From positions 2,294,001-2,358,000 of the forward strand of contig CM007989.1 in the NCBI GenBank assembly GCA_002189035.1: a DNA stretch of 64,000 nucleotides, given 5' to 3'. The number at the start of each line of letters is the position of its first letter. Position 1 is the first letter of the stretch. The position numbers and the translations under genes were made by a program. Origin of the DNA: Utricularia gibba (lineage: Eukaryota; Plantae; Magnoliophyta). Positions 17,592 to 29,901 of this stretch are shown piece by piece. The notes under the pieces were generated by a model. It worked only from the letters and a program-made list of their open reading frames with translations. It was not told the origin of the DNA and ran no database searches.

Positions 17592-18001
17592 CGCTGTTCC
17601 GTCCTGAATCGATAGACAGCGGCGCCATAGACATTTGTATGGCTTGTGACGCGCTGCTGGAAAAGAAAAAACGACACGTCGAGGGTTTTCCTCCAGCCAA
17701 TGGCATTCAAGAACTCTGCTGACGTGGATGTCAACACACTGCACTGTTCCAACTTTAATTCGAAAATTATTTTTTAAAAAATAGAAATCAATTATCACAC
17801 ACTTCCAAATTTTTATTTTTTTATGAGAGAATAAGTTACTTTCAACATAAAAAAGAAAATTACTTGACTTCTCATATAATGCAATTTATTCTCGAATAAG
17901 ATGTTCAATATTTTATATAATAAATGAGAAATATATTTTTATTTTATGTTACAATATTTATTTGATAACTAACATAAACCGCCATAATTTTATATATTGA
18001 A

Positions 18002-18186
18002 CACGTGCCGTTGCCGAGCACACCTGCCGGCGTCACTCACTCACCATGCGTGATTTTCTCTTTTAAGAAACGTTTCTAGTAGTGCACGTGCGTTTAGGCG
18101 CATGCTGGTTGACTACGTAACTCCATGCTCTCGTGCATGTTGACGTCATCCTGTCTACGTAACACAGTCATGTCGTGTAACACGTG
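18002..18186. promoter_or_regulatory. Dense ACGT-core cluster in the divergent p24delta / ACA-like intergenic region
   Basis: CACGTG at 18002, 18085 and 18181; TACGTA at 18114 and 18156; TGACGTCA at 18141. Confidence 0.55.
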
Positions 18187-18479
18187 ACCCTATGGGAAAA
18201 AGAAGAAGATACCCAGAGCAGCTGTTGAGCTGTTTAAAGGAATTCAACGTTGTGTTGAAATCTCATCCAACTTTGCATGGAGCAGTTGGTGGAGGTGCAA
18301 CTCGCAAGAATCTTCCGAGAAGCTTCGCGGGAGTCAAATGGCTGATTTTTTTACGCGAAACAATCAATTCAGGTGAGGCTCCGGTTGCAGCACATCGTTT
18401 GTTGTTGATAGTTATACTTTGAGTTTTCCTTCAACTTTGTTGTTGTTGTTGCGATAAACCAGTGTATTCCATCTGAAAA

Positions 18480-21400
18480 ATGGGGCCATACGTTCCTCAA
18501 CAGTTCGCCGGTGATGGCAGGAAAAAGCAGCAGTTAGAAATTGTAAGAGTCAAAAGGAACCCTTTCGAGAAGATGCGTAGATGGAAGGTGAGTGAAGGTC
18601 GCGGAAAAATTAGGGTTGTGATTTCCTCCAAAATTGAATTTCTCTCTCTCTGTGTTTTTTTTTTTTTTTTTTTTTTTTGTTCTCAGCAAGCTACTATGGT
18701 GTTGAGTGCCTTTCGGTTATTTGGGTCCAAATCAGGATCCAAGATTCAAAAGCAGGGGAAGCATTTGAGGGCCAAGATGAAAGCAAATGCTCATGCTGTT
18801 AGGGTTGCTGAAAGTTTGAAGTTGAAAATTTTTTATTCTTGTCTGTGTTGATAATGAGTCATGATTTTTTTTTTTATTGGAGGCAGGCTGCTGCGCATCT
18901 CCAAGCTTCTACAAACGGTATGAAGTTTAATTTTCCTTGCCTCTATATAAAAACTATCTGCTTGATTCGATATATTTATGAACAGATGATAATGGACTAC
19001 GGAAGGAACAGGACGAAGGGAGTAAAAGATATGTTGTTTGTACAGAAAAGAAGTCTACAACACCTGTGGGAGAATTCCTACAGAAAGATGGTGTGGATTC
19101 AGGAAAAGGTTTAGTGGTTTTCTTGTTTGGTTTAGGAATGCAAGAAACTTGAAGTTGATATACTGATTTTTAGATTCTAAAGGAAGCTTACATGTAGGTA
19201 GTAAAAGATATAGTGTTTGTACAGAAAAGAAGTCTTCGACAACAATGGCACAACTCCTACAGGAAGATAATTTGCATTTGAAAAAACGTCGGTTAGATGA
19301 ATCTGAGGTTTTCTTGTATTGTTTACGAAACTTGGAATTTTGATGTCTATATTTTTATCAAATGCAGAAGAATTGTGCCATGAAGGAAGCAAGAGATATA
19401 CTATTCGTACAGAAAAGTTAACAACATCCAGGAGTGAATTCCTACAGAAAGATGATTTGGGTTCGGGAAAAGGTTTGTTAAAAATCCATCCACGGTTTTC
19501 ATGTTTGGTTCTTAATCTTGTAAACTTGATGCTGGTAAAATCTTGATCAGATGCGAAAGGAATATGCCATGAAAGAAGCAACAGACATACTATATGTGCA
19601 GAAAATAAATCTGCAACAACTGAGAACGAACAGCTACAATATGATGGCTTGGACATGGGAAAAAGTTCCTTAGATCATTCCACGGTTTGCTTATTGAGTT
19701 TACGTGTCTCTGTTCTTTTTTCCTTCTAATTCATTGTGATTGACAGCAAGCATGACGCTAGTTCAGGGATACATGAAAAAGCTGGAGACTGTAACAAGAA
19801 TTGACAACTTTGGTATCAGCCTTAAGGATCTATCTGCCATGTCTAAGGAGCATGACATCTCTTTCTTAGAGCGAAATGGAGGGGCAAGTTTTCTGTCTAT
19901 TATGCATGTATCAACACTGAAATGTTTTTCCATTTGATGGATTTCCTTTTACGTTAGATTGGAGGAATTGCTGGGAAGCTAATAACGAATTTGAAAGAAG
20001 GTATATGTGGAGATGAGACTGATGTGAAACTTAGAAAAATGACTTTTGGATCAAATGAATATCCTAAGAAAAAGAGAAGCTTCTGGGTAAATTCATCTAC
20101 TCAAGAGATTATGTCGGTCCTGTTAGTGTAGGATTTTGCTCCACTTTCTTAACTTTTTCACCTGCTTATCTTCAGAGATTCATCCAGGATTCATGTACGG
20201 ACACCACCTTGGTTATCTTGATGTTTGCAGCTGTTGCTACTTCAGCCTTTGGAATAAAGACAGAGGTGAGGGATAGTACAATATTGGGTGAATAAAGGTC
20301 ATCTTCTGCTTAGATGAATAAAACAGGACTTTCGTATGTTATTAGGGAATAAACCGAGGTTGGTATGAAGGAGCAAGTATTGTTTTGGCTGTTCTTATAT
20401 TCATCATGTTTACAGGTATCTTTTGCATACTCATCATGTTTTGAGATAGCAACTATTTCGTTGTTGTAAAGGTTGGTTTTATTTCTTCTCAGCTGTCAAT
20501 AATTTCAAACAATTCATACTGATCCAGAAGATGGAAGAAGAAAAGGAGAAGATACAAGTGGAGGTCAGGGATATGCGCTGCCACTGTGCTTGCTTCTCTT
20601 CGTTTTCTTACTCACATGTTATGAATCACAGGTCCTTAGGGGCAATTCCCAAACAAAAGTTCACATAACAGAAATAGTTGCTGGGGACATTGTTAACTTG
20701 AGAACTGGTGATGAGGTGAAACCAAGTGTAACCAGTTTTCTTGTAGGCTCTTTCTCATCTTGTTAGTATATGATCTGTATTTATCTTCCCTTCAAAACAA
20801 AAAAACAGGTACCTGCAGACGGACTTGTCATCACCAGTCATTCCCTGTCAGTCGACGAGTCAAGAATGACAGGGGACAGTAAAATTGTGAGTAAATGCGA
20901 CAGTATACATTTTTTAGTTGTACACATTTTGTCTTAACGAAACGGGTTTTGTTTTTCTCTACAGATTCACAAGGATGCTGCAAGAGAGCCCTTTCTTATG
21001 GCAGGATCTAAAGTTGTTGATGGCAGGGGAAGAATGATGGTAAGAATCTTATATTCATGAAAGCCATCCTAAAATCATAAAAAATTGTGGGATTATTTAT
21101 TCTTGCACAGGTTACAAGTGTAGGAACCAATACTGAGTGGGGACTACTCAAGGCAAGCAGCATAAACGATCATCAAGAAACTCCTCTGCAGGTTACACAC
21201 TGCTGTTGGCAATTTTTAACATGCCCTCCCACCATCTTCTGATCATGAAACTGCTGCATCTTTGTCATGATTTCAGGTGCGGCTGGACGACGCAGGCACA
21301 TTCATCGGCATAGTTGCTGTTGTAGTATCTGCAGTGTTTCTCACTGTTCTTGTCATCGGGTACAAATACAACAAACACAGTTAGTTCTCTGGTTATTCCC

Positions 21401-21985
21401 TTCCTATTCTTTGACAACTCAATCACTATTTGTATGTGTAGGCTTTTTAGTTGGCGCAGTAGAAACCCCTATGGTAGTCTAGAGTTCATGACCTCAAGGA
21501 TCAAGTTGGTCAATGCAACAAACACCTTCATCAAGATTTTTACTGTGGCAGTAAATTCTCACACATTTCATTTGTGAATCAAAACCACATAACTGTTTAC
21601 AGCATATTACACTTTTTTTTTTTACCTGTTTCCTTCAGGTCACCATATTTGTGAAAGAAGCCCGTGAAGGCCTCCTCTTGGGCATCATTTTAGTGTAAGT
21701 TGAATGTCTAATATTAAAGTTGTTTATAAAACCCTTTTCAAAATGAATAACTAATAGTATATGCTTTCCATGCAGGTTTGCCTACTTGATGAAGGAATTA
21801 TATGCCAAAAAGGTCAATCCCATCATTGCATATATTTTATTTCTATTATTATTATTTATTTAAAAAACAAAACATGACTTGCCGTTTGCCTTCTACGCCA
21901 GGTACAAGCCAAGGGGCTATCCACAAGCCTGGAGATGGATGAGGTGAAAGAGCGAAAGAGGCGCAAACTTTTTCTTTGCATTTAG
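18480..21985 (+). CDS. Truncated, diverged ACA8/9/10-type (P2B) Ca2+-ATPase-derived protein, 21 exons, 631 aa, lacking P/N domains and M5-M10
   Basis: Exons 18480-18587, 18687-18803, 18887-18917, 18986-19108, 19174-19287, 19368-19472, 19551-19664, 19747-19883, 19958-20086, 20176-20265, 20346-20415, 20493-20563, 20632-20715, 20809-20886, 20965-21039, 21111-21191, 21277-21359, 21442-21550, 21639-21694, 21776-21812 and 21902-21985 sum to 1896 nt with matching phases and no internal stop. Motifs: RRWKQA..VL, FGSNEYP, WYEGASI, VPADG, DESRMTGDS, VGTNTEWG, ETPLQVRL. Confidence 0.85.
18986..19746 (+). repeat. Four tandem exon+intron units (period about 185-195 bp) inside the ACA-derived gene
   Basis: Exons of 123, 114, 105 and 114 nt, all phase 1-1, consensus GSKRYxxCTEKKSxT...LQxDxLxxGK; the introns share GGTTTTC, AAACTTG and CCACGGTTT. 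Confidence 0.9.
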
Positions 21986-22412
21986 GAGGTGTTCTGATAA
22001 TATTGATTATTAAATGTCACAATTTTGAGATACAGACGCAGAATCACATATTATACCTTCTTTTCTTTTCTGTTGAAAGTAAGATATGATCGAACCGTGT
22101 ATATATAGACTGTGAGCTCATTACAGAACAGCACAGCTGTGTTCTTTTCAGGGATTCCTGCTCTGCATTGTCTAGTTTGTGTGATCTTGCTCAACTCTGA
22201 TTCCTCAACGCTTGGTGGAAACCTCGTCTGAAGTGAAGTGCTAGCTAGCTTTATTGTGATGAGTCCATAAAAATACAAGCACAAGATGAAGAAAGAAAGC
22301 CTACTGCCTGACTGAACTCCCATGCTTCATCTCTGGTTGGTTGAGAGGAAGAATGGAATTTCACAGGTGACGCGAGACTGGCGTTTACAAAAGCATGCAA
22401 CTGGGTGCCTCT

Positions 22413-24862
22413 TTAAAACTGCCGGGATGTCGACCAAAGCTTCTTTCTGGCAACGAGCACTGCGTCTTCCTCTAGGCTGGCTTCTGGAACCGAATCGCCT
22501 ATGGCTTCCCAGCGCAATGGGCCCAGATACTTCTTTACATAGTTGACTACAGTTAGCTTATCATGGATGATGACAACGCCGGAAGGTCTAAGAATGCGGT
22601 CCATCTCAAGAAGAAGATCCTCGCTGCTACATCCTTTCTTCTTGATATCCGAAAAGACGGTCCAGGCATGGAGTAGGTCGTAAGTTCTGGGGTACGTGGA
22701 GAAGGCCTCGCACCTGCATGCAGAATGGTTCAGAGATGAAGCAAAGAGTGAAAAGACACAGTTAGTAAAAGGAAGCATAAAAGGTAGGCGTACCAGTTGT
22801 GCACACTGCCAATCAAACCTCGGTCATAGATAATCTTGAGTGTATTGGGTCCATCTTCAGGAACAACATTCATCACCCAGACATCCCTTTCTTTCAATGC
22901 AGCAGCAAAGGATCCTATGTTTGCTTTCATGTCCATCACATTTCTTATGCTATCAGCCAAAATATTTGGACCCAATATACTCCAATATTTGTCCACCCTT
23001 TGACGCCACAGATCCTGCTTGCAAAATTTCTCAACATTACACAAAGAACTGCCATCCCATATTTTGTCCAGAGTTGCAGATAATAATAGCAAGGTGAAGG
23101 AGAAGATACCGAATCATTTTCAAATATCTCGGATGAATAGCCGAGGTCAGCAAGGCGAGGAGGAGGAGAAATTAATCGAGCAGGCCATGGAGCCAGTCCA
23201 CTGCCTCTGGCTTTATGATCATCTGCAGTAAGAAAGAAGGAAAATAACATTGAAGTCAACGACTGATCAGCAAAAAAGGAGGGAGATGATAGTTTTCCAT
23301 CCAGGGTGGACATGCAGAAAGTAGGTATATGGTCTTTGTGTTAGCGATGCTCACGTTCAGAGTAGGGCATGATACAGGCCTTCATTGGTACACCCCAAAC
23401 GGCATCAGGATCATCATCTGATGCACAGAGAGGCGGCCGGGTTCCAGGCTTTCTTTCCAAATAGCAATGATTTGTTAATGGTTTTTGCCAAATAGCAGTC
23501 TGGTTTTTCCTTGCCACAACTTTCCAACACATGCGGCCAACAAGTGCATTCATCTCCTTCCATATTCTGCGATCCTCTTCATCCTGAGCATAAGCTTCAG
23601 GTGATGAGTAAACAAAATAACCGCCAGGTCGAAGAAGCCGATCCAACTCCAGAAGTAGTATCCCATCCCGCTGCAGCCAGTCGATTCTACAACGAGAACA
23701 ATGAGCTAGTTCAAAGGATCTGCTTGGGTAAGTGAGTCTCTTTGAACCTAGAACACCAAGGTATGCAGGAATTCCTCTTTCTAATGCGAATTGGATCTGA
23801 TTTTCATGCACATCATTAGGAGCAAGTGACATTGCAATCATGTCCGATGAAAGAAGGTAACCACCAAAGCTTGCAACACCACAACCAACATCAAGAACTG
23901 TGCGCAGTTTTCCTCTGTTGTTCAGGTTACTGTTCGGAAACTTGAGCATCTGCGATATCAAAAACAGTGTTCAGTAAGTGCCCATGCATTCCAAGGAGCT
24001 AGTGAGTCAGAAATTGCAATATGCTGAAATCAGCCGGTCAATTAGCATTTTCATATTTAAAACTCACACTTGCAATAGAAGCAATGTATTTATCAGCTCC
24101 ATAGTGAAAGTGAGTTCCTCCACCAGGAAAATAAATTTTGTTCCCTTTAACAACCATCCAATTCTGGTCAGATTTCTCGTGTGCTAAGTGAGTGTGAGGA
24201 ATGTTGGCTTTCCATACTTCATCTCTACTTTTTGGCCATTTTACTGGAATCTGTGGCTCAAAATGTTGCAAAACATTAGAGAAACAACAGAAACTGAGGT
24301 GATAAAACCACAATAACAACCATGAACGTAGATGTCCTCACCTTATATCCTCGAGGAGGTGGGATCAGACAATTGTAACGTCTGTCAGGTAATGGGCAGT
24401 GCCGTTCGTAGTGTTCCATTAAAGAATAATCCACCTTCAATCTCGTTTGATAAATAAGATTTTTGTCCAGGCAGGGGATCAACTCTGAAAGGTTATCATC
24501 ACAGACCTTTTGACATGCAGAAGATGATAATCAGAAATTGATAGCGGACTTCTAGTGTACTACTACTAGAATCTGAAGTGCCACAAAAATATGAAATCAC
24601 TTACAGGAAAGCTCTTGGGGAAAGCATCATCTGTCCATAATTTGGTGTAAGCTTCATGTAGCATACTAACAGAATCGGAATCTTCATCTCCATGCAAATA
24701 TGAAGATCCCAGTTTCATCAGAGACTCTTTGCCATACTGCAGAGCAGACTCTCCGGAAGTTCTTTTGCCAAAGTGGGCGTACAAAAACACAAGAAAAAGA
24801 GCAGCAAACACCACATAAGCAAAGATCCGCTTTTTATGTGCTCGAACTGAGCGCCCTCTCAT
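22413..24862 (-). CDS. Probable Golgi SAM-dependent methyltransferase, PMT1/3/8-like (DUF248, Methyltransf_29)
   Basis: Type II anchor; ELIPCLD...MEHYERHCP; [16 protein letters not shown]; [12 protein letters not shown]; RNVMDMKA; [11 protein letters not shown]; MDRILRP. Confidence 0.93.
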
Positions 24863-25079
24863 ATTTTCCAAAGGTTGACTGACTCAAGTGTAGGGGTTAA
24901 ACTCTCCAGATACAGAATACACAATGCTCAAAACATCATCCAATCGTCAATAAACGTTCAAATCCACCAAAATTATTGCATGCAGGACAATCACATCTAC
25001 CTGCATACGCTGTTCACAATATTAATATGCAACAAGAAATCCAACAAAGGATTTCAACAACAAGAATTATAACGAAGAT

Positions 25080-25231: not shown

Positions 25232-27221
25232 ACAATTTACAAGAATCATTTGGGAGAACAGATCTTCCAACTACTACATTGCCATTCTCTTTATACATTC
25301 AGAAAATCAGGAATTTGTGAAGACTAGATTTCCTAGCCAATCCAGCCTGATTGTCTAAGCCCTACGGAGTGTCAGAAAGGTTCAGATCTGAAACCTATCA
25401 TTATATATATTCTACATTCACACAGAATATATAACATGAAAAGTAGTTGGATGTCATATTTGGGTTTCCATTTCTCGAAAAATCGAATTTTTGACCTTCA
25501 GAAGTCAAGTGTCTCCCTAATAGTTCAAGAACAGCCCCCTCCCCATACATGATCTTACAAGAGAAAGTCACAATCCAGACGCCTCAAGAATCCGGATAGT
25601 CTTGCGATTTCAAACCGCCGGGAAAAACATACACAACATCTTATTGAATTCCAGGTAGATGAAACGGTAAATCAAACTCAAAAACAAATAGATCCGCAGA
25701 CAAAACAACAGATAAGGTCTAAAAGAAATAGGATTCTAAACTTATCGGATAATGTGACAGCATACGTGTGTCCAGTCAGAAGAATAAAAAACCAGAATAT
25801 TTGTTGCCCAATAACACATACCAGATCTATGCCTTCCTTTGAAGCGTTTGTATTATACATCTTACTTGCATACACTTGAATCGGAATGCGTCAATGGAGA
25901 AAAAGATAACTCATAGAAAACGTTGAAGCTAAAAGTGACAGGTCGGGTGCCAACTTGGGGATCAAAACAGTGATAATTTGGCAGCGGATTTGGGGATACA
26001 ACCGGCGTCCGCGATTTGGGCATGAATTGATGAGACCCAGAATTTGTGGAAGACGGTCAATCGAGAAAATGCAATGAAAATGAACCCTATGTGATTAACG
26101 CCGTTCAAGTAGCTGTTTGCCATTCCTTCTCAAAAACCACAAACGAAGTAGCCGTTTGTCATTGATGAAGGCGCATTTTAACCATATCATTATTTTCTTG
26201 GGTTCCTTTTCTTTGCTTTCTATAATTTCTTTTTTACGTTAGTCAGGCGGAGGGCGATGCAGTGGCGGCGGTCAGACAACCCGGCGCGGCGGGATATTGC
26301 CACAGCAATTTTAGTAATTAGGGTTTCATAATTGGGATTAGTCGTACGGTATCACTTTATAAAAACCTTATTTTTCTAAAATGTAATTTTTTCAAATGAT
26401 AGGGATAAGTTTACTAAAAATCCGCGGGAACTACAGCTTCTCGCTTTGAACTAATTAAAATAAACGGTATTTTTTAAAAAAAACAAATAATAATAGTGAT
26501 TATTAGCGCCATATCATCATTTGGAAATGAATGTTCTATGGATGCCTTTAGTTGTAAGATTCATATATGTTAAAAATATGTGTGGATAGGATAAAATATA
26601 ATTTTTTAATAAATTATGTTTAGGATGAAAACATTATTATTTATATAACAATTATTATATTATTATTATTTTTAATGTGTATTAAAAGAAAAATAAAAGA
26701 TGAAAATGCAAAATTTATATATTCTAAACTTTAGATATATCTAATACTAATTCCAATCATAAGTTTTATTTCAATTATTAAATGTGATATTTTAATGTCT
26801 CTTGAAATTTTCCCTCTAATACCATCAACAAGTTGGACCTCCAAAAACGGTTTAACAGAGTGTAGGCTGTGAAGCACTGAACACCGTCTTCCATGAAGCA
26901 CTATCACTTCACCTAACCTGCACATGGGAGGAGATGTAAAGGAGGTGCGATCAGTGGGGGGTGGCCTGGCCAATATGTTGTACGGATACTTGACTTGTTC
27001 GTGAGGGGTGTAGTGTAGTGTGGAACCGAGCAGAAAAATGGGAACATTTAGAGGAATCTTTTATTGCTGAATCGTGTGTTGTGGTGGACAACACGAAGAA
27101 CAGATTTCATGTTGTGGTGGGGACCTTAGCTAGTGCTGTGGATGTACGCGTTGTCTGTTGTCTATAAATGCCATTCTGCTGCGTCCATGGAGGATCAAGT
27201 TTGTAGGCATAGCACAGTGCT

Positions 27222-27779
27222 ATGGAAGCCAAGAAGGGAAGCGTTGTTGCCATTCTTGTCTTCCTGGTGCTGTGGGTTGCAGCATGCTCTGCAGCCAGGA
27301 CCTTGATTGGGGTGGAGACATACCATGGAGCTTTCGGTGAGGGTGGAGGGTCGGGCTTCGGGGGTGGAGAAGGTGGAGGCGGCGGTGGTGGAGGTGGGTT
27401 TGCAGCAGGTGGTGAGTATGGTTCCGGGTATGGGAGTGGTGGTGGGGAAGGCCATGGCGGCGGTGGTGGACTCAATGGTGGCGGTGGTGGTGGCGGCGGT
27501 GGTGGAGGCGGCGGAGGTGGAGCTGCTGGTGGATACCCTGGCTATGGTGGTGGGCATGCGTGGGGATACGGAGGAGGTGAAGGAGCAGGCATTGGTGGCG
27601 GACATCCCGGAGGATATGGCGGCAGTGGCATCGGGGGCATTTACGGTGGGGGTGGCCGCGGTGGCTCCGGCTACGGGAGCGGAGGAGGAGCAGGTGGAGG
27701 TGCCGCAGGCGCAGCACATGGAGGAGGATATGGTGGAGGCGAAGGAGGCGGCGGCGGTTATGGTGGCTATGCTCCTTGA
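27222..27779 (+). CDS. Secreted glycine-rich cell wall protein, intronless
   Basis: Signal peptide MEAKKGSVVAILVFLVLWVAACSA followed by GGGxG/GYG repeats; TATAAAT at about 27163. Confidence 0.92.
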   Translation: MEAKKGSVVAILVFLVLWVAACSAARTLIGVETYHGAFGEGGGSGFGGGEGGGGGGGGGFAAGGEYGSGYGSGGGEGHGGGGGLNGGGGGGGGGGGGGGGAAGGYPGYGGGHAWGYGGGEGAGIGGGHPGGYGGSGIGGIYGGGGRGGSGYGSGGGAGGGAAGAAHGGGYGGGEGGGGGYGGYAP

Positions 27780-27937
27780 CGCCGGGTGATGATCATGCAC
27801 TACTGATTCTGCAAATGCAAGCATGCCTCAAACTGGAAGGATGCCCCATACGGCATTCCAGTGATGTATGGCAATGTACTTTGCTTATGCATCTTCATAA
27901 TACAAACTACATTTAAAAAAGAACATCATCTGTCTAC

Positions 27938-29247: not shown

Positions 29248-29901
29248 ATGGGAAGTTCATCAAACTACAGAAACCCTTGTTTGACGATGCACCAACCGTG
29301 GGCTTCACTGCTGGTCCATGGTATCAAACGAATCGAGGGCAGGTCTTGGCCTGCTCCGATTCGAGGGCGTCTTTGGATCCATGCCGCTGGTAAGGTTCCA
29401 GAGCCTGATACCATAAAAGCTATGGAAGATTTTTACCGTGAAATCTATGCTGTGGATGGAATAACAGACCTAAAGTTTCCAGAGCATTACCCAGTATCCA
29501 GGTTACTTGGTTGCGTTGATGTAGTTGGGTGTGTTACTTGTGAAGAGCTAGTAAATTGGGATGCTGTACCGCAATCTGTGAGATTGGAAGGGCAAACATC
29601 GTTTTGTTGGCTGTGTGAGCGACCCCAGAAACTAGTTATCCCATTTGAGATGCGTGGCTACCAGGGGGTATATAATTTGCAGAAGAAGGTATACGAATCC
29701 GCCGTCAGGGGTCTTGCATCTGCTTCTGCCCCTTTACCAGCCACATTCCCACTTCCGTATCCTGGAGATCGGTTCTCGTTGAAACCTTGCTCACGTCCTT
29801 CACCAGATGAGGAAAAGCCTCCTGGTCTTGAAGCTGCCATCGCTGGTGCTAGGATGGCTGCGAATCAATTTTCGAAGAAGACATCTCATGGCGGCAAGTA
29901 A
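29248..29901 (+). CDS. ASCH-domain (ASC-1 homology) RNA-binding protein, single exon, 217 aa
   Basis: CLTMHQPWASLLVHGIKRIEGRSW...GRLWIHAA signature; uninterrupted ORF. Confidence 0.92.
   Translation: MGSSSNYRNPCLTMHQPWASLLVHGIKRIEGRSWPAPIRGRLWIHAAGKVPEPDTIKAMEDFYREIYAVDGITDLKFPEHYPVSRLLGCVDVVGCVTCEELVNWDAVPQSVRLEGQTSFCWLCERPQKLVIPFEMRGYQGVYNLQKKVYESAVRGLASASAPLPATFPLPYPGDRFSLKPCSRPSPDEEKPPGLEAAIAGARMAANQFSKKTSHGGK

What the first reader, a model, noticed from the sequence alone, without database searches (positions are those of the whole stretch)
18480..21985. An intact 21-exon 'half-pump' derived from an autoinhibited Ca2+-ATPase that cannot be a pump
Seen: 21 exons splice into a 631-aa ORF with every phase matching and 20 intact introns (19 GT-AG, 1 GC-AG). 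Homology ends at FAYLMKELYAKK. The last exon (VQAKG...LCI*) replaces the VRRLSACETMG...DKTGT exon, and a convergent PMT gene ends 427 bp later, leaving no room for the P, N and M5-M10 exons. Established: P2B pumps need the DKTGT aspartate and the C-terminal helices. Inference: heavy amino-acid divergence with no stop or splice loss suggests selection on a new function, for example a membrane-anchored CaM-binding decoy or scaffold, or a dominant-negative partner of ACA8/9/10-type pumps. The stop lies in the last exon, so an NMD trigger is not expected.
Basis: partly seen in the sequence, partly recalled or inferred. Interest (0 to 1): 0.9.

Follow-up and report, generated by a model that had tools for sequence, protein, structure and literature searches.

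The report
Expressed, selected half of a calcium pump
A plant gene that keeps only the front half of a calcium pump is transcribed, correctly spliced and still held open by natural selection, so it probably has a new job that is not pumping, but that job is unknown.

Summary
RNA contigs from two independent studies confirm the junctions. They shift one acceptor and one intron, both in frame, giving a 623-aa product. Transcripts end 60-225 nt after the stop, 19 nt short of the convergent PMT transcript. No significant trace of later pump exons remains.

The gene nests inside the core-Lamiales ACA10-like clade and matches the first 17 of their 33-34 exons, plus four inserted tandem repeat exons.

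It cannot pump. DKTGT, the P and N domains and M5-M10 are absent, TGES is TGDS, PEGL is REGL, and 48 of 141 positions invariant in 160 eudicot pumps are changed.

It is not drifting either. On its branch dN/dS is 0.24 (about 0.17-0.33). Neutrality is rejected (p=4e-19), and so is the pump background of 0.07 (p=2e-6). A neutral phase long enough to explain the excess changes would leave the ORF stop-free with probability about 3e-11.

Much of the "heavy divergence" is lineage-wide: dS is 1.3, and a neighbouring control gene has dS 1.2 with unchanged dN/dS.

The function is untested. It is most likely a membrane-anchored regulator, comparable to the truncated SERCA1 variants. No ortholog was found. 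Two other first-reader notes cover parts of this same stretch.

The parts
18407..18479 (+). 5' UTR (minimum extent)
   Evidence: The RNA contig of run X1 starts at 18407. No upstream ATG occurs between 18407 and 18479.
18480..18917 (+). Exons 1-3 (18480-18587, 18687-18803, 18887-18917): N-terminal autoinhibitory, CaM-binding-type region
   Evidence: BLASTP to the N-terminus of a full-length ACA10-like protein gives 34% identity over 71 aa, E=8e-9. The only PDB hit of exon 2 is the ACA8 regulatory domain of the CaM complex 4AQR, and it is weak (E=0.8). The W (18582-18584), L (18702-18704) and F (18720-18722) residues lie at 1-8-14 spacing. Branch dN/dS is 0.26.
18986..19684 (+). Four tandem repeat exons with their introns. 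RNA-supported exons: 18986-19108, 19198-19287, 19368-19472, 19551-19684. This inserted ~150-aa hydrophilic segment is absent from other ACAs.
   Evidence: the repeat finder reports 4 copies spaced 179-192 nt apart. Exon identity is 63-77% against 49-64% for introns. Pooled dN/dS among copies is about 0.6. All four exons are included in the mRNA, since contig lengths fit. The segment is absent from the Lamiales orthologs.
19685..19766 (+). Intron 7 as used in RNA, partly retained in a minority of transcripts
   Evidence: Exon 7 contigs run to 19684/5 and exon 8 contigs begin at 19766. Unspliced contigs cover 19656-19795 at depth 4-5, against 13-18 for the flanking exons.
19767..20563 (+). Exons 8-12 (19767-19883, 19958-20086, 20176-20265, 20346-20415, 20493-20563): linker, Cation_ATPase_N, M1 and M2. 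Includes the GC-AG intron 19884-19957.
   Evidence: Pfam Cation_ATPase_N scores E=2e-5 on exon 9. Junctions are seen in 3-4 RNA runs. Hydrophobic segments M1 and M2 are present.
20632..21191 (+). Exons 13-16: A-domain beta-barrel. TGES is changed to TGDS at 20869-20880.
   Evidence: Pfam E1-E2_ATPase matches exons 13 and 14. Alignment. This region has the lowest dN of the gene (0.243) and one of its lowest branch dN/dS values, 0.18.
21277..21812 (+). Exons 17-20: M3 and a degenerate M4. VVAVPEGLPLAVT has become VKEAREGLLLGII, with REGL at 21663-21674.
   Evidence: Alignment. Changed invariant positions are listed. This region has the highest dN of the gene, 0.47. The hydrophobic peak is shifted to GLLLGIILVFAYLM.
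21902..21985 (+). Last exon (27 aa plus stop). Its 5' part is the remnant of the ancestral exon that carried DKTGT. The rest is a basic tail of unrecognisable origin.
   Evidence: Nucleotide alignment to exon 17 of three Lamiales genes shows a 4-nt insertion. RNA junction 21812/21902 is seen in 3 runs.
21986..22210 (+). 3' UTR. Transcripts end at about 22045-22047 or 22210.
   Evidence: Contig ends in runs X3, X5 and X1. No significant relic of later ACA exons was found.
22229..25000 (-). Convergent PMT-type methyltransferase gene (neighbour, not part of the element). The end coordinate is approximate.
   Evidence: Pfam Methyltransf_29. RNA contigs start at 22229.

Best explanation
This is a real, expressed gene derived from an ACA8/10-type autoinhibited Ca2+-ATPase of the Lamiales lineage, and it has lost everything from the middle of the DKTGT exon onward.

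The 623-aa product contains:
- the N-terminal autoinhibitory, CaM-binding-type region;
- about 150 new residues from four tandemly duplicated exons;
- the A domain;
- hydrophobic segments M1-M3;
- a degenerate M4;
- a 27-residue basic tail.

It cannot hydrolyse ATP or transport Ca2+ (shown). Its reading frame and splice sites have been kept by relaxed purifying selection, while residues that never vary in working pumps were free to change (shown). It therefore most likely serves a non-pump role (inferred).

The most likely mechanism (inference, about 0.3) is a membrane-anchored regulator of Ca2+ handling. One form is a regulatory N-terminus and A domain that bind CaM and/or full-length ACAs in trans. 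The other is a leak-promoting half-pump like the truncated SERCA1 proteins.
For: Gene model.

Expression: spliced RNA contigs from studies P1 (2020) and P2 (2017), and partly P3 (2024), confirm the junctions of exons 8-21, including the GC-AG intron. Word depth is similar to the neighbouring PMT gene. There are no loose ends leading to other exons. Contig lengths fit the 623-aa model exactly.

Ancestry:
- It nests in the core Lamiales ACA10-like clade (support 96/92 and 98/100) on a terminal branch about 75 times the median.
- Exon order and sizes match the first 17 exons of the 33-34-exon genes of Andrographis, Paulownia and Sesamum.

Not a pump:
- No DKTGT, P, N or M5-M10.
- TGES is TGDS and PEGL is REGL.
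- 48 of 141 positions invariant in 160 eudicot pumps are changed.
- Identity to any ACA is 46-50%, where pumps share 77-100%.

Selection:
- Branch model gives dS 1.31, dN 0.31, omega 0.24 (profile interval about 0.17-0.33).
- Omega=1 is rejected with LRT 80, p=4e-19. Omega equal to the background 0.071 is rejected with p=2e-6.
- Raw pN/pS is 0.38.
- The control gene ASCH in the same window has dS 1.2 and omega 0.08, equal to its background.
- A neutral phase of d=0.24, which is what the excess dN would need, leaves no in-frame stop with P=3e-11. P>=0.05 requires d<=0.03.
- Repeat exons are more alike than their introns.
Against: - No ortholog or same-genome paralog could be examined. The omega is an average over a long branch that must include an unknown period as a working pump, and the date of truncation is unknown.
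- dS is close to saturation (pS 0.65-0.68).
- The codon model is my own four-taxon implementation, not PAML.
- No evidence of translation (no Ribo-seq or peptides).
- Both of the two transcript polymorphisms with listed positions are nonsynonymous (R26S, Q59E), and the repeat exons evolve at omega about 0.6.
- The N-terminal CaM-type region is less conserved than the core. Pfam CaATP_NAI did not score on the separate exons.
- The tissue of expression is unknown.
Confidence: 0.6

Rival explanations
1. It is a transcribed relic. The gene lost its 3' half during genome shrinkage, has no function, and has simply not yet acquired a stop or a splice defect.
For: - The end of the ORF looks like damage: indel scars in the ancestral DKTGT exon and a read-through tail.
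- A third of the pump-invariant residues are changed and M4 is wrecked.
- No ortholog was found among 1.84 billion representative proteins.
- Both listed polymorphisms are nonsynonymous.
- Other unchecked notes describe 'mini' genes in the same genome.
Against: - Omega=1 is rejected at p=4e-19.
- The neutral divergence needed for the observed changes (d about 0.18-0.24) gives P(no stop) of 1e-8 to 3e-11, before counting indels and 40 splice sites.
- All 20 introns are still spliced correctly, and expression is comparable to the neighbouring gene.
- Repeat exons are more conserved than repeat introns.
Confidence: 0.2
2. The truncation is recent. The selection signal comes from a long earlier life as a full-length, already deviant ACA paralog. 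That paralog was either a weakly functional pump or a pseudo-pump. Today's half-gene is freshly dead or of uncertain value.
For: - The age of the 3' deletion cannot be dated with the data at hand.
- One large deletion with a breakpoint inside the DKTGT exon would leave exactly this structure and no relics.
Against: - The M4 Ca2+-site helix carries at least 11 changes at invariant positions, including inserted K, E and R. M3-M4 has the highest dN of the gene, 0.47. This is hard to reconcile with any working pump, so pump function was lost long ago.
- An intact ORF limits any unconstrained period to d<=0.03.
Confidence: 0.12
3. It is a split pump. The missing P, N and M5-M10 half is encoded elsewhere, and the two polypeptides assemble into an active ATPase.
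For: None directly. The rest of the genome could not be searched.
Against: The retained half has lost residues that every pump keeps (TGES, PEGL, the M4 core; 34% of invariant positions). No transcript joins to other exons.
Confidence: 0.02
4. It is an assembly artefact that dropped the 3' half of a normal ACA gene.
For: None.
Against: RNA contigs from three runs run from exon 20 through exon 21 into the 3' UTR, colinear with the genome up to 22210. DNA runs hold 93-97% of the words, although the best holder may be the sample the window was assembled from. The retained half is itself far diverged from any pump.
Confidence: 0.01

Closest known systems
Plant autoinhibited Ca2+-ATPases of the ACA8/9/10 group (P2B), specifically the Lamiales ACA10-like genes (Andrographis P0344, Paulownia P0317, Sesamum P0320)
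   Same: It descends from them (tree). The first 17 exons have the same order and sizes, and it shares Lamiales-specific residues. The N-terminal regulatory region, Cation_ATPase_N, the A domain and M1-M3 are recognisable.
   Different: - It lacks exons 18-34: DKTGT, the P and N domains, and M5-M10.
- TGES is TGDS and PEGL is REGL.
- 34% of invariant positions are changed.
- Four extra repeat exons are present.
- dN/dS is 0.24 instead of 0.07.
- The genomic neighbours differ.
S1T, the truncated SERCA1 proteins of human cells (Chami et al. 2001, PMC2192035)
   Same: Both are C-terminally truncated P2 Ca2+-ATPases that keep the N-terminal part with the early membrane helices and the M4 glutamate. 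Both lose M5-M10, end in a short frameshifted or novel tail (22 aa there, 27 aa here), and cannot pump. S1T proteins form homodimers, increase ER Ca2+ leak and lower ER Ca2+. This is a tested precedent for a half-pump with an activity.
   Different: S1T are splice variants of an intact pump gene. Here the truncation is fixed in the gene, the sequence has diverged for a long time under its own selective regime, and it carries a plant CaM-type regulatory N-terminus plus new repeats. Leak activity has not been tested here.
Expressed duplicated or unitary pseudogenes
   Same: It is truncated relative to its parent. There are indel scars at the end of the ORF, catalytic motifs are lost and evolution is faster.
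   Different: It does not evolve neutrally (omega=1 is rejected). There is no internal stop or frameshift in 623 codons, and all 20 introns are spliced.

Membership tests
P2B Ca2+-ATPase (functional ACA pump) | DKTGT phosphorylation motif and P domain | tested here: not met
   The ORF stops before the motif. No significant relic lies downstream or elsewhere in the window.
P2B Ca2+-ATPase (functional ACA pump) | TGES dephosphorylation loop in the A domain | tested here: not met
   It reads TGDS at 20869-20880. E is invariant in 160 panel pumps.
P2B Ca2+-ATPase (functional ACA pump) | PEGL(P) motif and M4 core of the Ca2+ site | tested here: not met
   VVAVPEGLPLAVT has become VKEAREGLLLGII. Only E, G and L are kept.
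P2B Ca2+-ATPase (functional ACA pump) | Ten membrane helices, N domain and Cation_ATPase_C | tested here: not met
   Four hydrophobic segments only. The gene ends 427 nt before the next gene.
P2B Ca2+-ATPase (by descent: ACA8/9/10-type gene lineage) | Phylogenetic position and shared intron-exon structure | tested here: met
   Nested in the Lamiales ACA10-like clade with starred support. Exon sizes and order match exons 1-17 of three Lamiales genes.
P2B Ca2+-ATPase (by descent: ACA8/9/10-type gene lineage) | N-terminal autoinhibitory CaM-binding domain (CaATP_NAI) | tested here: inconclusive
   Homologous by BLASTP (E=8e-9). W/L/F anchors at 1-8-14 spacing are kept. The only PDB hit is the ACA8-CaM complex 4AQR, at E=0.8. 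Pfam did not score the two exons separately. CaM binding was not tested.
S1T-like truncated P2 ATPase | Truncation after M4 with loss of M5-M10, M4 glutamate retained, unable to pump | tested here: met
S1T-like truncated P2 ATPase | Made by alternative splicing of a full-length pump gene | tested here: not met
   No downstream exons exist. All transcripts end in the 3' UTR.
S1T-like truncated P2 ATPase | Homodimer that raises Ca2+ leak | not testable with these tools
   Needs expression and Ca2+ imaging.
Pseudogene | Neutral evolution (dN/dS about 1) with accumulation of stops, frameshifts and splice defects | tested here: not met
   Omega is 0.24 and omega=1 is rejected at p=4e-19. The ORF and all 40 splice sites are intact. 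P=3e-11 under the required neutral divergence.
Pseudogene | Not transcribed, or transcript degraded | tested here: not met
   Spliced contigs in runs of three studies, at depth similar to the neighbour.

The most novel reading that the evidence does not exclude
A gene-encoded 'half-pump' has been kept by selection as a new kind of Ca2+-signalling component. It would be a membrane-anchored protein made of the ACA regulatory N-terminus, a new repeat linker, the A domain and M1-M4. It would either modulate full-length ACAs or CaM in trans, or form an S1T-like Ca2+ leak pathway. This would show that P-type ATPase fragments can evolve into stand-alone regulators.
Probability: 0.3. Interest if true: 0.8.

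Novelty: new variant of a known kind. Interest (0 to 1): 0.58.

Why it matters
Truncated P-type ATPases are known mainly as splice variants or disease alleles. Here, a pump's front half exists as its own gene, has lost pump-specific constraint, and is still protected by selection and expressed.

If its role is confirmed, it would add a new type of player to plant Ca2+ signalling. It would also give a natural experiment on what the regulatory N-terminus, A domain and M1-M4 can do without the catalytic core.

It also illustrates how a shrinking, fast-evolving genome can turn deletion damage into a new gene. And it warns that raw divergence in such a lineage overstates gene-specific change, because here dS alone is about 1.3.

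Tried and rejected
(1) Finding the protein itself or an ortholog. An HMMER search of 1.84 billion representatives with exon 9 gave only fragments and mis-predicted ACAs at 67% identity or less.

(2) Building a mixed profile from exon pieces aligned to a full-length ACA. MAFFT scattered the fragments, so the alignment was unusable and was not searched.

(3) Whole-protein searches, Pfam on the whole protein, and structure prediction. None was done, because the spliced protein has no reference and I did not paste it.

(4) Synteny.
- The ACA10-like genes of Andrographis, Paulownia and Sesamum alatum have other neighbours (retroelement gag, O-FucT, LRR, Rieske). None has p24 or PMT within 10 kb.
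- The ASCH gene's neighbours in three Lamiales are also different.
- It is therefore unknown whether this locus is the ancestral ACA position.
- Sesamum indicum P0292 was not on record.

(5) Relics of later exons in the 3' UTR.
- 'CSDNIDY' just after the stop looked like CSDKTGT. 'FFSFLLKVRYDRTVY' looked like the VVKVVRWGRSVY exon.
- Neither beats shuffled sequence (fraction of shuffles scoring as high: 0.22-0.76). Both were dropped.

(6) Origin of the repeat unit. It has no consistent similarity to exons 3, 8 or 9 or their introns (two isolated R2 scores, at shuffle p about 0.01, were not followed), and no other copy in the window.

(7) Literature. No paper describing this gene, or a truncated ACA of this kind, was found in the searches made.

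(8) The earlier-findings word search for ACA returned nothing.
Full report
**Anatomy**

Reading 18000-23000 and translating the three forward frames shows ACA-type peptide blocks in order. There are 19 GT-AG introns and one GC-AG intron (19884-19957), all 65-99 nt long.

Pfam recognises Cation_ATPase_N on exon 9 and E1-E2_ATPase on exons 13 and 14. The flanking genes are a p24 (EMP24_GP25L) gene upstream and a convergent PMT (Methyltransf_29) gene. The PMT stop codon begins 427 nt after the ACA-like stop.

**Transcripts**

Eight RNA runs of one coded organism were listed, and six of them hold part of the stretch. The best five hold 33-38% of the sampled 31-mers. That is what full exon coverage predicts, since short exons contribute few genomic 31-mers.

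I laid four runs from three studies on 17900-23400.
- One contig per run in three runs (two studies) joins exons 8 to 21 through thirteen junctions.
- Those junctions coincide with the model, including the GC-AG intron, which a fourth run also shows.
- The contigs continue colinearly into the 3' UTR, to 22045-22047 (X3, X5) or 22210 (X1).
- The PMT transcript begins at 22229.
- No loose end leads from this gene to other sequence.
- Word depth (about 7-20) is in the range of PMT (about 11-30).

The 5' contigs run from 18407/18443 through exon 1 to 19684/5.
- Their total lengths (781 and 746 nt) require exons 2-6 to sum to 466 nt, not 490. An exon 5 acceptor at 19198 gives exactly this.
The main intron 7 is therefore 19685-19766 (GT-AG, in frame).
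- Low-depth contigs (19656-19795) show some intron retention.
- The exon 7-8 junction and the exon 5 acceptor are inferred from contig ends and lengths. They were not displayed as joints.

The RNA-supported product is 623 aa with no internal stop. DNA runs of 2013 hold 93-97% of the words, although the best holder may be the sample the window was assembled from. The truncated structure is real and is not an assembly error.

**Ancestry**

Exon 9 found no identical or closely related protein among 1.84 billion representatives. The best matches were fragments or mis-predicted ACAs.

Full-length eudicot ACA8/9/10-type pumps are 77-100% identical to one another over the N-terminal 480 residues. The window protein reaches only 46-50% against any of them.

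In a 37-taxon tree it sits inside the core Lamiales ACA10-like clade (96/92 and 98/100), on a terminal branch about 75 times the median.

The genes of Andrographis, Paulownia and Sesamum alatum have 33-34 exons. Their exons 1-3 and 4-17 correspond in order and size to window exons 1-3 and 8-21. Window exons 4-7 have no counterpart. They are four tandem copies of a roughly 185-nt exon-plus-intron unit.

The last exon is not foreign. Its first ~13 codons align with the start of the ancestral exon that encodes RRLSACETMG...DKTGT, with a 4-nt insertion that is compensated a few codons later (p 0.03-0.06 by shuffling, at the expected position). After that, homology is lost, and the frame runs 14 more codons to a stop.

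Apparent relics of DKTGT and of a later exon in the 3' UTR did not beat shuffled controls. The Lamiales genes are not flanked by p24 or PMT. So I cannot say whether this locus is the ancestral one.

**It cannot be a pump**

- DKTGT, the P and N domains and M5-M10 are absent.
- Within the retained half, TGES reads TGDS.
- The M4 core VVAVPEGLPLAVT reads VKEAREGLLLGII.
- The stalk motif SDYKQSLQFQ reads NNFKQFILIQ.
- Overall, 48 of 141 positions that are invariant in 160 eudicot pumps are changed.
- Four hydrophobic segments remain, and the fourth is shifted.

**It is not drifting**

I threaded codons onto a four-taxon alignment (380 codons, excluding the repeats and exon 21).

| Quantity | Window branch | Lamiales background |
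|---|---|---|
| dS | 1.31 | 0.08-0.43 |
| dN | 0.31 | 0.006-0.03 |
| omega | 0.24 | 0.071 |

- Omega=1 is rejected (LRT 80, p=4e-19), and so is a single omega (p=2e-6).
- The profile interval for omega is about 0.17-0.33.
- Raw pN/pS is 0.38, with pS 0.65-0.68. dS is therefore near saturation, and omega is, if anything, overestimated.
- Every region rejects omega=1. dN is lowest in the A-domain barrel (0.24) and highest in M3-M4 (0.47).

As a control, the ASCH gene 7 kb away shows the same long synonymous branch (dS 1.2). Its omega is 0.08 against a background of 0.09. The lineage as a whole evolves fast. What is specific to the half-pump is a roughly 3.4-fold relaxation of constraint, not the bulk of the divergence.

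Could this be a pump phase followed by drift?
- Explaining the excess dN, or the 34% change at invariant sites, by a neutral phase needs d of about 0.18-0.24 substitutions per site.
- With intron base composition and kappa 2.4, the 623 codons would collect about 100 nonsense substitutions per unit d.
- That gives P(no stop) of about 1e-8 to 3e-11, before counting frameshifts and 40 splice sites.
- P>=0.05 limits any neutral phase to d<=0.03.
- Most of the change therefore accumulated while broken alleles were being removed.
- The repeat units give an internal check. Their exons (63-77% identity) are more alike than their introns (49-64%). Yet their pooled omega is about 0.6, as expected for a weakly constrained linker.

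**What it may do (inference)**

The protein keeps a basic N-terminal helix with W, L and F at 1-8-14 spacing, as in the ACA8 CaM-binding site. The only PDB match of exon 2 is that complex, and it is weak. It also keeps a well-preserved A domain, and the M4 glutamate.

The closest tested precedent is S1T, the truncated SERCA1 proteins. They lose M5-M10, end in a 22-aa frameshifted tail, cannot pump, dimerise and raise ER Ca2+ leak (PMC2192035).

I therefore favour a membrane-anchored modulator of Ca2+ handling, acting through CaM, through full-length ACAs or through leak. I hold this loosely, because the regulatory region is less conserved than the core, and nothing here tests binding, location or translation.

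**Limits**

- No ortholog or same-genome paralog was available, so the age of the truncation is unknown.
- Read laying could be used only once.
- The spliced protein could not be submitted to whole-protein searches or to folding.
- The organism is coded. A compact Lamiales (total DNA-run contigs about 95 Mb, introns about 80 nt, high dS) fits Lentibulariaceae, but that is an inference.

**Verdict**

The 'not a pump' reading is sound. The inference of selection is now supported quantitatively. The specific function remains open.

Noticed in passing
window 29248-29901 (+): The ASCH-domain gene is a single uninterrupted 217-codon ORF here. Its orthologs in Andrographis, Erythranthe and Sesamum have 6-7 exons (5 introns within the part shared with this ORF). 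Its dN/dS on this lineage is unchanged (0.08). This points to complete intron loss or a retrocopy that replaced the parent.
   Followed up: partly
window-wide (measured on 18480-21812 and 29248-29898): The window's lineage has a very long synonymous branch (dS about 1.2-1.3), against 0.1-0.8 for other Lamiales. Genome-wide fast evolution inflates every protein divergence in this genome.
   Followed up: partly
window 19656-19795: Low-depth RNA contigs in two runs retain intron 7. Read-through would stop after about 14 codons and give a product of about 250 aa, made of the regulatory N-terminus and the repeats only.
   Followed up: no
window 18557 and 18753: Run X5 (another study) differs from the genome at G>T and C>G. 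Both are nonsynonymous (R26S, Q59E) and lie in the N-terminal regulatory region. Two further differences in exons 9 and 21 were not located.
   Followed up: partly
window 22210-22229: The longest half-pump transcript and the convergent PMT transcript end only 19 nt apart, so their terminators are almost back to back.
   Followed up: no
same genome, other windows (notes s1-195063, s1-195042, s1-222626): Unchecked first-reader notes describe an ATPase-less mini-ClpB 113 kb beyond this window, a mini-SMXL3, and an intronless ACA8/9/10-type fragment in the mitochondrial genome. Domain-losing 'mini' genes may be a pattern in this compact genome.
   Followed up: no
window 27107-27824, both strands: A glycine-rich protein ORF (27222-27779, +) lies in a low-complexity GC-rich stretch that also gives long ORFs on the opposite strand. 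The antisense ORFs are probably compositional artefacts.
   Followed up: no
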